A stretch of DNA of 64,000 bases, from positions 124,001 to 188,000 of the IMG/VR virus record IMGVR_UViG_3300010938_000951; one strand, 5' to 3'. Below are positions 52,544 through 52,617 of this stretch, in pieces. The notes below the pieces were generated by a model. The model made no database searches. It was given only the letters and a program-made list of their open reading frames with translations, and was not told where the DNA came from. Position numbers and translations under genes: made by a program. Position 1 is the stretch's first letter. Each line of letters opens with the position of its first letter.

Positions 52544-52617
52544 CCGCTCTTGGTATAGTGGCTGTGCCGCCGACTCTAAATCGGCAGAGCTGTGTTCAAA
52601 TCACAGAGAGCGGGCCA
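52544..52617 (+). tRNA. Amber suppressor tRNA (anticodon CUA), C1-G72, G73
   Basis: CCGCTCT/AGAGCGG, GCCGA-ctCTAaa-TCGGC, CTGTG-ttcaaat-CACAG, CCA. Confidence 0.93.

What the first reader, a model, noticed from the sequence alone, without database searches (positions are those of the whole stretch)
52544..52617. Amber suppressor tRNA 1 with an unusual C1-G72/G73 acceptor
Perfect cloverleaf with CUA anticodon and encoded CCA. U35 plus G73 is the classic signature of amber suppressors charged by GlnRS. G73 is also the bacterial TrpRS discriminator, and C1-G72 is typical of archaeal/eukaryotic tRNA-Tyr. The inserted amino acid is therefore open, and the tRNA may be orthogonal to host synthetases.
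Basis: partly seen in the sequence, partly recalled or inferred. Interest (0 to 1): 0.7.

Follow-up and report, generated by a model that had tools for sequence, protein, structure and literature searches.

The report
Conserved phage amber-suppressor tRNA
A genuine, conserved tRNA that reads the UAG stop codon sits beside a second one in a giant soil phage that almost never ends its own genes with UAG; this habit of jumbo phages is known but unexplained, and here the tRNA has an unusual design and carries an unknown amino acid.

Summary
Window 52544-52617 (+) is a canonical 74-nt tRNA with anticodon CUA, C1-G72, G73 and an encoded CCA. Three further variants in related huge-phage contigs carry 7 compensatory base-pair changes. 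It is the G73 member of a tandem pair; Sup2 (52628-52700) has A73 and a Lys-like body. The pair lies in a translation island with tmRNA, a PTH2-type hydrolase and IF3.

The phage (267-kb contig, 65 tRNAs) and two larger relatives use the standard code. I found no credible sense TAG. TAG ends only 2-5% of genes and none across the late half. The complete relative also encodes RF2, which does not read UAG.

In relatives the same slot holds either this tRNA or a clearly Trp-derived CUA tRNA with U1-A72/G73. The phage encodes TrpRS, LysRS, TyrRS and PheRS, but no GlnRS. The inserted amino acid stays open: Gln via a host GlnRS, or Trp via the phage TrpRS. Tyr and Pyl readings are rejected.

The closest known case is the tandem A73/G73 suppressor pair of Xanthomonas jumbo phage XacN1, whose targets are also unknown. 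Verdict: a real, probably functional amber suppressor and a new variant of a known kind.

The parts
52544..52617 (+). Sup1: amber-suppressor-type tRNA (anticodon CUA, C1-G72, C2-G71, G73, encoded CCA); 'type A' of the family
   Evidence: ARAGORN; Rfam tRNA 47.1 bits; 21/21 pairs; covariation in 4 distinct orthologues
52628..52700 (+). Sup2: second CUA tRNA, 10 nt downstream; A73, no encoded CCA, Lys-like body, G27.A43 and C31.A39 mismatches in the anticodon stem; 'type C'
   Evidence: ARAGORN; Rfam 62.5 bits; 90% mean identity across relatives, with compensatory changes in the three central anticodon-stem pairs; BLAST hits mostly annotated tRNA-Lys, plus the tRNA-Sup of XacN1 and RAS14
52220..52537 (+). 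Conserved 105-aa ORF ending 6 nt before Sup1; no family match; used as the synteny anchor
   Evidence: no Pfam, NCBIfam or PHROG hit
52703..53179 (+). 158-aa ORF starting 3 nt after Sup2's discriminator base; function unknown. The tRNAs are embedded in a gene string with no convincing promoter or terminator of their own
49947..50301 (+). One-piece tmRNA (tag ANDNAFAMAA), 2.2 kb upstream; synteny with the suppressor pair is conserved
   Evidence: Rfam RF00023 114.9 bits; ARAGORN on relatives
51691..51987 (+). PTH2-type peptidyl-tRNA hydrolase homologue
   Evidence: Pfam PF01981, 30.9 bits against a cutoff of 23
54725..55264 (+). Translation initiation factor IF3 (both domains)
   Evidence: Pfam IF3_N 111.9 bits, IF3_C 92.3 bits; phrog_9787
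55273..55348 (+). tRNA-Arg(CCU), the conserved downstream boundary of the island
49055..49456 (+). tRNA-Thr cluster, the conserved upstream boundary of the island
4818..5792 (+). Phage-encoded bacterial-type TrpRS, a candidate charging enzyme for a G73 suppressor
   Evidence: TIGR00233 267 bits against a cutoff of 177; best PDB match 3m5w; present in G001, G002 and G003
6895..8088 (+). Phage-encoded bacterial-type TyrRS; argues against the archaeal-Tyr reading
   Evidence: TIGR00234 369 bits; best PDB match 2ts1

Best explanation
Sup1 is a functional amber-suppressor tRNA of a huge soil phage. It is transcribed with its neighbours on a polycistronic + strand RNA and cut out by RNase P and 3' processing. 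It is then aminoacylated on the strength of G73 plus U35, most likely with Gln by a host GlnRS or with Trp by the phage's own TrpRS, and it decodes UAG in competition with host RF1. It works as the G73 half of a two-member suppressor set; Sup2, with A73 and a Lys-like body, is probably charged by LysRS. The phage does not use UAG as a sense codon. It has removed UAG from its own gene ends (2-5% of stops, none in the late half), and the complete relative supplies RF2 to keep UAA and UGA termination working. UAG read-through during infection therefore costs the phage almost nothing. What read-through achieves is inferred, not shown. Options are damage to host proteins whose genes end in UAG, tolerance of nonsense mutations, or a stable 'vacant codon' stage on the path to TAG recoding. 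Shown: the tRNA fold, the anticodon, conservation with covariation, the pairing with an A73 partner, TAG depletion, the absence of sense TAG, RF2 in the relative, and the set of aaRS genes. Inferred: expression, charging, the amino acid, and the biological purpose.
For: tRNA fold and anticodon. Purifying selection on the cloverleaf, with 7 compensatory pairs and 0/500 shuffles. The anticodon loop CUCUAAA is identical in 29 of 30 distinct CUA tRNAs of the family, across three different tRNA bodies; it carries the A36-A37-A38 context typical of efficient amber suppressors (own knowledge). Every related locus with room has 1-2 CUA tRNAs at this slot and never a sense anticodon. Types A and B never co-occur, and every locus long enough to show two tRNAs pairs them with a type-C tRNA. 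TAG is 23-25% of off-frame stop triplets but only 1.8-5.1% of real stops, P = 1e-20 to 1e-42. There are no TAG stops in G001 180-390 kb and none in G000 210-267 kb. TAG stops are the least conserved (46% against 82% for TAA and 77% for TGA), and in this phage read-through tails are only 1-18 codons. Standard-code coding density is 91-92% in three genomes, with no credible in-frame TAG. RF2 in the complete relative scores 383 bits on TIGR00020 and has SPF and GGQ motifs. Phage TrpRS, LysRS and two CCA-adding-type enzymes are present. The type-B slot-mate resembles tRNA-Trp. Experimental prior: 90 of 162 phage CUA tRNAs suppress UAG in E. coli extract, and 28 of 29 analysed insert Gln, which is near-isobaric with Lys (PMC12636597). 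XacN1 has the same tandem A73/G73 design and 18 amber stops in 592 genes.
Against: There is no direct evidence of expression, processing or charging; the RNA runs found hold only about 5% of the locus words. No sense TAG exists, so no 'client' codon shows the inserted amino acid. For GlnRS (E. coli rules, own knowledge), C1-G72 is a strong pair, C2-G71 is inverted, A38 replaces U38, and 3-70 is not conserved. For TrpRS, C35 is lost, and A1-U72, G5-C68 and A9 are absent in type A. 42 of 162 phage CUA tRNAs were inactive in E. coli extract. RF2 is seen only in G001; that region lies beyond the ends of this contig (about 62% complete) and of G003. Several phage genes still end in TAG, two of them in all three genomes. 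TAG is the rarest stop in many bacteria anyway, so part of the depletion could be unrelated to the suppressors.
Confidence: 0.6

Rival explanations
1. Dedicated pair: Sup1 is charged specifically by the phage-encoded TrpRS and inserts Trp at UAG, so it is a natural phage synthetase:suppressor pair, possibly orthogonal to the host. Sup2 would likewise pair with the phage LysRS.
For: G73 is the main bacterial TrpRS determinant (own knowledge). The anticodon arm matches the phage tRNA-Trp apart from C35U and the 31-39 pair. The interchangeable type-B slot-mate is clearly Trp-derived. TrpRS is conserved in all four genomes. Two of only four phage aaRS (Lys, Trp, Tyr, Phe) match the ancestral bodies of the two suppressors. 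Phage TrpRS:suppressor pairs have been shown experimentally for UGA (PMC12636597).
Against: Bacterial TrpRS reads C35, which is lost here; the classical tRNA-Trp(CUA) su7 is charged mainly with Gln in E. coli (own knowledge). Type A lacks the A1-U72, G5-C68 and A9 that type B retains. Lys, Tyr and Phe use AT-rich codons, so their synthetases may simply serve a low-GC phage. TrpRS sits 47 kb from Sup1, not in a 'code-change operon'. The association is post hoc.
Confidence: 0.2
2. True recoding: the phage reads TAG as a sense codon in late (structural or lysis) genes, as crAss-like and Lak phages do, and those genes lie in the unsampled part of the genome.
For: The contig is estimated at only 62% complete. 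Suppressor tRNA plus RF2 is the toolkit of TAG-recoded phages (Borges et al.).
Against: The 100%-complete relative G001 and the 83%-complete G003 have 91-92% coding density in code 11, and no TAG-split genes survive filtering. G001 has no TAG at all at ORF ends across 180-390 kb. Treating TAG as sense gives no specific gain in ORF coverage. Related loci show no TAG-specific internal stops.
Confidence: 0.06
3. Not a decoding tRNA: a tRNA-like element kept for another role such as an RNA-processing punctuation mark, a primer, a decoy for tRNA-targeting host defences or an integration target, or a decaying gene.
For: No client codons were found. About a quarter of phage CUA tRNAs are inactive in E. 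coli extract. Its body is a mosaic with no close relatives.
Against: The seven loop nucleotides are conserved across three unrelated tRNA bodies, which points to selection on decoding rather than on shape. All tertiary-core positions are intact: U8, A14, G18G19, G53-C61 and the T loop. It co-occurs with TAG-stop depletion and RF2. All four stems show compensatory evolution or invariance.
Confidence: 0.08
4. It inserts an amino acid other than Gln or Trp, for example Glu via GluRS (the U13.G22..A46 and missing-47 'augmented D helix' resembles E. coli tRNA-Glu), Lys, or Ala.
For: U13.G22, A46 and a 4-nt variable loop are present. If the host lacks GlnRS, a C1-G72 tRNA would not be amidated by GatCAB, which needs U1-A72 (own knowledge). 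One tested phage CUA tRNA inserted Ala.
Against: The same D arm and variable loop occur in a tRNA-Gly(UCC), so they are scaffold features rather than proof of Glu identity. There is no G3.U70. LysRS prefers A73 (own knowledge).
Confidence: 0.06

Closest known systems
Tandem amber-suppressor tRNA pair of Xanthomonas jumbo phage XacN1 (AP018399.1 36047-36122 and 36130-36205; Yoshikawa et al. 2018, PMC5852040); also the single CUA tRNAs of Stenotrophomonas phage RAS14 and Ralstonia phage RsoM2USA
   Same: Two adjacent CUA tRNAs (7 nt apart in XacN1, 10 nt here), one with A73 and one with G73, both with loop CUCUAAA. A tmRNA lies nearby. The phage is a jumbo phage with a full tRNA set that uses the standard code and has very few amber stops (18 of 592 in XacN1). 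No read-through target has been identified.
   Different: XacN1's two tRNAs share one Sup2-like body and differ only in the acceptor stem. Here the G73 member has an unrelated body: a Gly-type core, a Trp-like anticodon arm and C1-G72. XacN1 and RAS14 encode no release factor, whereas the complete relative of this phage encodes RF2.
E. coli su7 (tRNA-Trp with CUA anticodon) and supE (tRNA-Gln with CUA)
   Same: G73 with C34 U35 A36. A single anticodon change away from a Trp or Gln tRNA. The anticodon arm is nearly that of the phage tRNA-Trp, and type-B relatives have a tRNA-Trp body.
   Different: su7 has A1-U72 and supE has U1-A72/G2-C71; Sup1 has C1-G72/C2-G71. Sup1 is not a recent point mutant of any tRNA in the genome (best identity 68%).
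Suppressor tRNA (+RF2) systems of TAG-recoded (code 15) crAss-like, Lak and Agate phages (Borges et al. 2021/22; Peters et al. 2022)
   Same: A phage-encoded CUA tRNA, RF2 in the lineage, TAG depleted as a stop, and a standard-code host presumed.
   Different: Those phages carry in-frame TAG codons in late genes. Here none was found in three genomes, one of them complete. This phage corresponds to the 'standard-code relative with suppressor' stage those authors proposed, but here that stage is conserved across a diverged clade.
Phage synthetase:suppressor pairs characterised by cell-free screening (AP1 TrpRS:tRNA-UCA, GlnRS:tRNA-CUA-59, TyrRS:tRNA-CUA-27; PMC12636597)
   Same: A phage genome that encodes both aaRS genes and stop-codon-reading tRNAs; G73 was noted there as a TrpRS-relevant discriminator.
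   Different: Those pairs come mostly from recoded gut phages and are co-located in 'code-change operons'. Here TrpRS lies 47 kb away and nothing has been tested experimentally.
tRNA-Pyl (the label ARAGORN prints for any CUA anticodon)
   Same: CUA anticodon and G73.
   Different: Sup1 has a canonical cloverleaf with G18G19, a UUC T loop, a 5-bp anticodon stem, 2 nt between the acceptor and D stems, and a 4-nt variable loop. No PylRS is present.

Membership tests
tRNA (Rfam RF00005) | Covariance-model score above the gathering threshold; cloverleaf with the conserved tertiary core | tested here: met
   47.1 bits against 29; U8, A14, GG in the D loop, G53-C61 and a UUCAAAU T loop
Amber suppressor tRNA | Anticodon CUA in a 7-nt loop with U33 and a purine at 37 | tested here: met
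   Loop CUCUAAA at 52574-52580
Amber suppressor tRNA | Is aminoacylated and reads UAG in vivo | not testable with these tools
   Indirect support only: loop conservation, TAG-stop depletion, RF2 in the relative
Jumbo-phage tandem A73/G73 suppressor pair (XacN1 type) | Two adjacent CUA tRNAs with different discriminators in a standard-code, TAG-poor jumbo phage | tested here: met
   Sup1 G73 and Sup2 A73, 10 nt apart; TAG is 4% of stops; XacN1 comparison
Code-15 (TAG to Gln) recoded phage system | In-frame TAG codons inside conserved phage genes; low coding density under code 11 | tested here: not met
   Coding density 91-92% in code 11; no credible in-frame TAG in G000, G003 or G001
Code-15 (TAG to Gln) recoded phage system | Phage-encoded RF2 | tested here: inconclusive
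   Absent from this 62%-complete contig; present in the complete relative G001
Gln-type suppressor (supE-like; E. coli GlnRS identity set) | U35, G73, G10, A37 | tested here: met
   All present
Gln-type suppressor (supE-like; E. coli GlnRS identity set) | Weak U1-A72 pair, G2-C71, G3-C70, U38 | tested here: not met
   C1-G72, C2-G71 and A38; 3-70 is G-C here but A-U in L025
Trp-derived suppressor (su7-like) | G73 and a tRNA-Trp anticodon arm with C35U | tested here: met
   GCCGA-CUCUAAA-UCGGC against the phage tRNA-Trp GCCGC-CUCCAAA-ACGGC
Trp-derived suppressor (su7-like) | tRNA-Trp body: A1-U72, G5-C68, A9, and Trp-type D and T arms | tested here: not met
   Type A has C1-G72, U5-A68, G9 and different D and T arms. 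The type-B slot-mate does meet most of these
Tyr-type suppressor (supF-like bacterial, or archaeal M. jannaschii-like) | A73; long variable arm (bacterial) or C1-G72 with an archaeal-type TyrRS | tested here: not met
   G73 and a 4-nt variable loop; the phage TyrRS is bacterial-type
tRNA-Pyl / PylRS system | 6-bp anticodon stem, 3-nt variable loop, 1 nt between acceptor and D stems, small D loop without GG; a PylRS gene | tested here: not met
   Canonical geometry. TIGR02367 has no hit above cutoff. The tRNA-synt_2d gene is a single-chain PheRS
tRNA-Gly | U73, C35, C36, G1-C72 | tested here: not met
   Only the scaffold is Gly-like: positions 8-26 and the variable loop are identical to a CPR tRNA-Gly(UCC), and C2-G71 and G3-C70 match

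The most novel reading that the evidence does not exclude
Sup1 (G73) and Sup2 (A73) are a purpose-built, two-identity suppressor set. Together with phage RF2, tmRNA, a PTH2-type hydrolase and IF3 they form a host-takeover module. The phage fills the cell with UAG readers, so host genes that end in UAG are read through and their products are damaged or tmRNA-tagged. The phage's own late genes, which have no TAG, are immune, and RF2 keeps UAA and UGA termination efficient. On this reading a vacant codon is used as a weapon rather than as a step towards recoding, which would explain why this state is conserved across a diverged clade and recurs in XacN1.
Probability: 0.15. Interest if true: 0.8.

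Novelty: new variant of a known kind. Interest (0 to 1): 0.5.

Why it matters
Phage amber suppressors are known from TAG-recoded gut phages, and they have been noted as an unexplained curiosity in a few cultured jumbo phages. This case adds four things.

1. A whole clade of soil huge phages keeps the suppressor pair at one syntenic slot while using the standard code. TAG is almost absent from gene ends, and RF2 is present in the complete member. The 'vacant UAG plus suppressor' state therefore looks stable and selected, not just a brief stage in code evolution.

2. The G73/A73 two-member design recurs in an unrelated cultured phage, XacN1. That gives a laboratory system for testing what such pairs do.

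3. The G73 slot is filled by interchangeable tRNAs built on different bodies. This one has a Gly-type core, a Trp-like anticodon arm and a C1-G72 acceptor. That shows tRNA identity being rebuilt on a different scaffold.

4. A natural CUA tRNA with a non-standard acceptor end, next to phage TrpRS, LysRS and TyrRS, is a candidate source of orthogonal pairs for genetic-code expansion.

Tried and rejected
1. **Paralogue search.** Looking for the tRNA Sup1 was derived from inside the genome gave a best identity of 68%, and the result was similar in G001 and G003.

2. **Sense-anticodon orthologues.** I searched IMG/VR and metagenomes for an orthologue with a sense anticodon that would reveal ancestry. 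Every slot-mate has CUA.

3. **First genome-wide in-frame-TAG test.** This was flawed: non-coding frames of conserved genes also align between relatives. I discarded it.

4. **G003 46889 (-).** In the filtered test this TAG aligned to Lys in two orthologues. It is a spurious antisense ORF lying over a real + strand gene that my gene caller had dropped.

5. **G000 183321 and G001 179219.** These TAGs lie in a conserved 5' leader just upstream of the start Met, not in coding sequence.

6. **G001 420-480 kb.** I considered this as host flank, for host identification, or as a TAG-recoded late module. It is a higher-GC segment with RNA ligase, RadC and AAA genes, and treating TAG as sense gives no specific gain there.

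7. **tRNA-Pyl reading.** Rejected.

8. **ARAGORN 'ochre-type' tRNAs.** G000 41327 and G001 50073 are structurally poor predictions.

9. **Supplement of PMC12636597.** I searched for Sup1-like sequences, but no supplementary files are held.

10. **Public RNA runs.** They hold too little of the locus to show expression, so I did not lay reads.

11. **Complex prediction of TrpRS with Sup1.** I did not run this, because its controls (shuffled RNA) cannot tell one tRNA identity from another.

12. **Host identity.** I could not establish it. The tmRNA tag (ANDN...) is proteobacteria-like only from memory.

Full report
**1. The observation**

ARAGORN finds 21 RNA genes in the window, including a tRNA at exactly 52544-52617 (+) with anticodon CTA and a second CTA tRNA at 52628-52700. 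Rfam's tRNA model scores the first at 47.1 bits (gathering score 29) with no non-canonical pair, and the second at 62.5 bits with two non-canonical pairs in the anticodon stem.

Read from the sequence, Sup1 is a 74-nt class I tRNA:
- acceptor CCGCUCU/AGAGCGG, so C1-G72, C2-G71 and G3-C70
- G73, and an encoded CCA at 52615-52617
- D stem GUAU/GUGC with two G.U pairs, and a 7-nt D loop with GG
- C26
- anticodon stem GCCGA/UCGGC and loop CUCUAAA
- 4-nt variable loop AGAG
- T stem CUGUG/CACAG and T loop UUCAAAU

All 21 stem positions pair. The MFE fold has the four helices (-31.4 kcal/mol, z = -2.97).

Two details need qualifying. C1-G72 also occurs in seven other tRNAs of this genome: three Pro, two Ile, one Met and an Arg-ACG that also has G73. 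The encoded CCA is the rule in this genome (63 of 65 tRNAs), but it is missing in two of the four Sup1-type orthologues.

**2. The genome**

The window is bases 124001-188000 of a single 266,899-bp IMG/VR viral contig with 39% GC, rated about 62% complete. It has 65 tRNAs clustered by amino acid, many of them as same-anticodon doublets, plus a tmRNA.

It encodes four synthetases:
- a bacterial-type TrpRS (window 4818-5792) and TyrRS (6895-8088)
- a LysRS (genome 8822-10441; TIGR00499, 495 bits)
- a single-chain, mitochondrial-type PheRS (genome 105885-106991)

It also encodes two CCA-adding-type nucleotidyltransferases. No other aaRS core family was found in this contig or in two relatives, one of them complete. 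That includes GlnRS/GluRS. No PylRS and no SmpB were found. The locus occurs in soil, rhizosphere and groundwater metagenomes.

**3. Conservation and relatives**

The 105-aa ORF that ends 6 nt before Sup1 recovers 5 IMG/VR contigs (198-481 kb) and 23 metagenomic loci. Synteny is conserved: Thr tRNAs, tmRNA..., CUA tRNA(s)..., tRNA-Arg(CCU). Every locus with enough sequence downstream has one or two CUA tRNAs there, and none has a sense anticodon.

The 30 distinct sequences fall into three groups:
- **Type A** (this tRNA: C1-G72, C2-G71, G73): 4 distinct sequences.
- **Type B** (U1-A72, C2-G71, U3.G70, G73): 10 distinct sequences.
- **Type C and others** (Sup2-like; mostly A73 and mostly no encoded CCA): 16 distinct sequences.

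Types A and B never co-occur. In every locus long enough to show two tRNAs, the A or B tRNA is paired with a type-C tRNA. All but one of the 30 share the full loop CUCUAAA.

Within type A, 84 of 84 cells pair and 7 of 21 pairs changed on both sides; 0 of 500 shuffles match this. C1-G72, C2-G71, G73, the D arm and the variable loop are invariant. The 3-70 pair varies between G-C and A-U.

On a short, poorly resolved tree of the flanking protein, type A is scattered: 4 changes are needed, and supported branches force at least 2. This hints that the tRNA cassette has been exchanged between lineages.

**4. Is TAG recoded? No**

Code-11 ORFs cover 91-92% of this contig, of G003 (359 kb, 83% complete, type A) and of G001 (481 kb, rated 100% complete, type B). 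Treating TAG as sense gives no gain beyond the TGA and TAA controls.

A filtered search for TAG codons flanked on both sides by the coding frame gave 35 candidates, against 115 for TGA and 183 for TAA. None survived inspection. Related loci show no TAG-specific internal stops.

TAG is instead nearly absent as a stop:
- It ends 16 of 386, 26 of 446 and, in the phage-proper part of G001, 17 of about 520 called genes.
- Among genes of 100 aa or more it is 1.8-5.1% of stops, although TAG is 23-25% of off-frame stop triplets (P = 1e-20 to 1e-42).
- There are no TAG stops across G001 180-390 kb, one in G003 150-300 kb, and none in G000 210-267 kb.
- The remaining TAG stops are the least conserved (46% against 82% for TAA and 77% for TGA). 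In this phage, read-through would add 1-18 residues. Two small genes keep TAG in all three genomes.

The complete relative encodes RF2 in its phage-proper region (TIGR00020, 383 bits against a cutoff of 370; SPF and GGQ motifs; one uninterrupted ORF). That region lies beyond the ends of this contig and of G003.

**5. Which amino acid?**

Sup1 has no close paralogue (best identity 68%) and no relative among 50,697 phage records, apart from a 24-nt match to a tRNA-Gly. It is a mosaic:
- Its positions 8-26 and its variable loop are identical to a tRNA-Gly(UCC) from a CPR bacterium. C2-G71 and G3-C70 are also Gly-like, but U73, C35 and C36 are not present.
- Its anticodon arm differs from the phage's own tRNA-Trp(CCA) only at C35U and the 31-39 pair, and both tRNAs have C26, G73, a 7-nt D loop and a 4-nt variable loop.

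The interchangeable type-B tRNA is clearly Trp-derived. Its best matches are annotated tRNA-Trp genes of the Caulobacter phage CcrSC (84% over positions 7-66, E = 5e-8) and of Erwinia, Acinetobacter, Mycobacterium and Rhodococcus phages. It shares the D arm, T arm, G5-C68, A9 and G73 with them, but its acceptor stem is rewritten and starts U1-A72, the tRNA-Gln hallmark. Sup2 resembles tRNA-Lys.

By the classical rules (own knowledge), U35-containing amber suppressors are captured by GlnRS when they have G73 and by LysRS when they have A73, and tRNA-Trp(CUA) (su7) is charged mostly with Gln. In a cell-free screen of phage CUA tRNAs, 28 of 29 active ones inserted Gln, which is near-isobaric with Lys, and 42 of 162 were inactive (PMC12636597).

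Against Gln, Sup1 has a strong C1-G72 pair, an inverted 2-71 pair and A38. Against Trp, it has lost C35 and lacks the Trp acceptor features. My estimates are Gln about 0.35, Trp about 0.3, and another residue or none about 0.35. Tyr and Pyl are rejected.

**6. Context and mechanism**

Sup1 starts 6 nt after the upstream stop codon. Sup2 follows 10 nt later, and the next ORF starts 3 nt after Sup2's discriminator base. Promoter-like sites are no more frequent than chance, and no terminator separates the genes. Co-transcription followed by processing is therefore inferred.

The neighbourhood is a translation island:
- tmRNA (49947-50301)
- M23 peptidase
- PTH2-type peptidyl-tRNA hydrolase (51691-51987)
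- Sup1 and Sup2
- HNH endonuclease
- IF3 (54725-55264)
- tRNA-Arg

The best-supported reading is that the pair makes UAG a read-through codon during infection. The phage escapes the cost because it has purged TAG, and RF2 protects the other two stops. Why it does this is not shown.

**7. Comparison with known systems**

The closest case is the cultured jumbo phage XacN1. It has two CUA tRNAs 7 nt apart with identical bodies that differ only in the acceptor stem and discriminator (A73 and G73), and a tmRNA 1 kb away. Its authors counted 18 amber stops in 592 genes and found no read-through targets (PMC5852040). RsoM2USA and the siphophage Summit are similar. XacN1 and RAS14 encode no release factor.

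Borges et al. proposed the sequence 'TAG depletion, then suppressor acquisition, then recoding of late genes', and they noted a standard-code relative carrying a suppressor. The present clade fits the middle stage but appears stable in it.

**8. Verdict**

Sup1 is a real, conserved and probably functional amber-suppressor tRNA. It belongs to a known but unexplained kind, the jumbo-phage suppressor pair with no target. It is a new variant of that kind because of its mosaic body and C1-G72/G73 acceptor, and because the lineage also carries RF2 and its own TrpRS and LysRS. The inserted amino acid and the purpose of read-through remain open.

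Noticed in passing
window 49947-50301: One-piece tmRNA (Rfam 114.9 bits) with tag ANDNAFAMAA. Relatives have ANDNAFAPVALAA, ANDNAFESFALAA, ANDNAYAMAA and ANDNSYAMAA. No SmpB gene was found in any of the four related genomes.
   Followed up: partly
window 51691-51987: A PTH2-type (archaeal/eukaryotic-type) peptidyl-tRNA hydrolase homologue (PF01981, 30.9 bits) in a phage, sitting between the tmRNA and the suppressor pair.
   Followed up: no
window 54725-55264: Full-length translation initiation factor IF3 (both domains), immediately upstream of tRNA-Arg(CCU).
   Followed up: no
window 4818-5792 and 6895-8088; G000 8822-10441 (L090:823-2442); G000 105885-106991 (L100:386-1492): The phage's synthetase set is TrpRS, TyrRS, LysRS (with an N-terminal extension of about 66 aa) and a single-chain, mitochondrial-type PheRS (class II core plus FDX-ACB domain; TIGR00469, 263 bits). 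These cover the three aromatic amino acids plus Lys. Next to the PheRS is a small RelA/SpoT-type HD-domain protein.
   Followed up: partly
window 1090-1166 and 1169-1243: Two class I tRNAs (short variable arm, 75-77 nt) with leucine anticodons CAG and UAG (Rfam 60.9 and 62.5 bits). Bacterial tRNA-Leu normally has a long variable arm. The second one, like Sup2, lacks an encoded CCA.
   Followed up: no
whole contig G000 (tRNA list): Many anticodons occur as doublets (His, Asp, Phe, Ile-GAU, Asn, Lys, Arg-UCU, Arg-ACG, Gly, Val-UAC, Gln-CUG, Pro-UGG). The two copies have different architectures: a compact form with a 7-8-nt D loop and 4-nt variable loop, and a 'GCUC-AGU.GG.A-GAGC' form with a 5-nt variable loop. 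The Sup1/Sup2 pair follows the same pattern.
   Followed up: partly
window 49300-49377: A tRNA-like gene inside the Thr cluster with an abnormal anticodon region (ARAGORN reports a 2-base 'cg' anticodon; Rfam scores 43.9 bits with a 10-nt insert). It has the U73 discriminator of the neighbouring Thr tRNAs. It may contain an intron or be defective.
   Followed up: no
G000 84229-84302 (outside the window): A tRNA with the arginine anticodon CCG but a Gln/Glu-type body (U1-A72, UC-GUCU-AACGGCA-GGAU, A73). This looks like an identity/anticodon mismatch.
   Followed up: no
window 59246-59320: A non-coding leader just upstream of the gene that starts at window 59333 is conserved at about 83% between this phage and G001. 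It contains TAG triplets at different positions in the two genomes. It may be a regulatory RNA element.
   Followed up: partly
G000 57831-58169 and 62568-62891 (outside the window): Two small genes (112 and 107 aa) keep a TAG stop in all three genomes although TAG is otherwise purged. Read-through would add 18 and 7 residues. They are candidates for programmed read-through.
   Followed up: partly
G001 420000-480000 (L087-L089): The last 60 kb of the 'complete' relative changes abruptly to 50-60% GC, with short genes, ordinary TAG use (22 of 112 stops) and RNA ligase, RadC and AAA ATPase genes. It is probably a foreign element or a chimeric join. Treating TGA as sense raises coverage by ORFs of 300 aa or more from 16% to 61% there, which is unexplained.
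   Followed up: partly
L101:2498-2573 and 2581-2656 (Xanthomonas phage XacN1): XacN1's two suppressor tRNAs are identical from position 8 to 65. They differ only in the acceptor stem and discriminator: GGCCCGU..A73 and GCUUUCG..G73. This is a natural 'same body, two acceptor identities' experiment.
   Followed up: partly
window 53368-53859: An HNH endonuclease (phrog_5200, 170.6 bits) is inserted between the suppressor pair and IF3. In relative L002 an extra ~1.3 kb separates the two suppressor tRNAs, so this slot is a hotspot for insertions.
   Followed up: no
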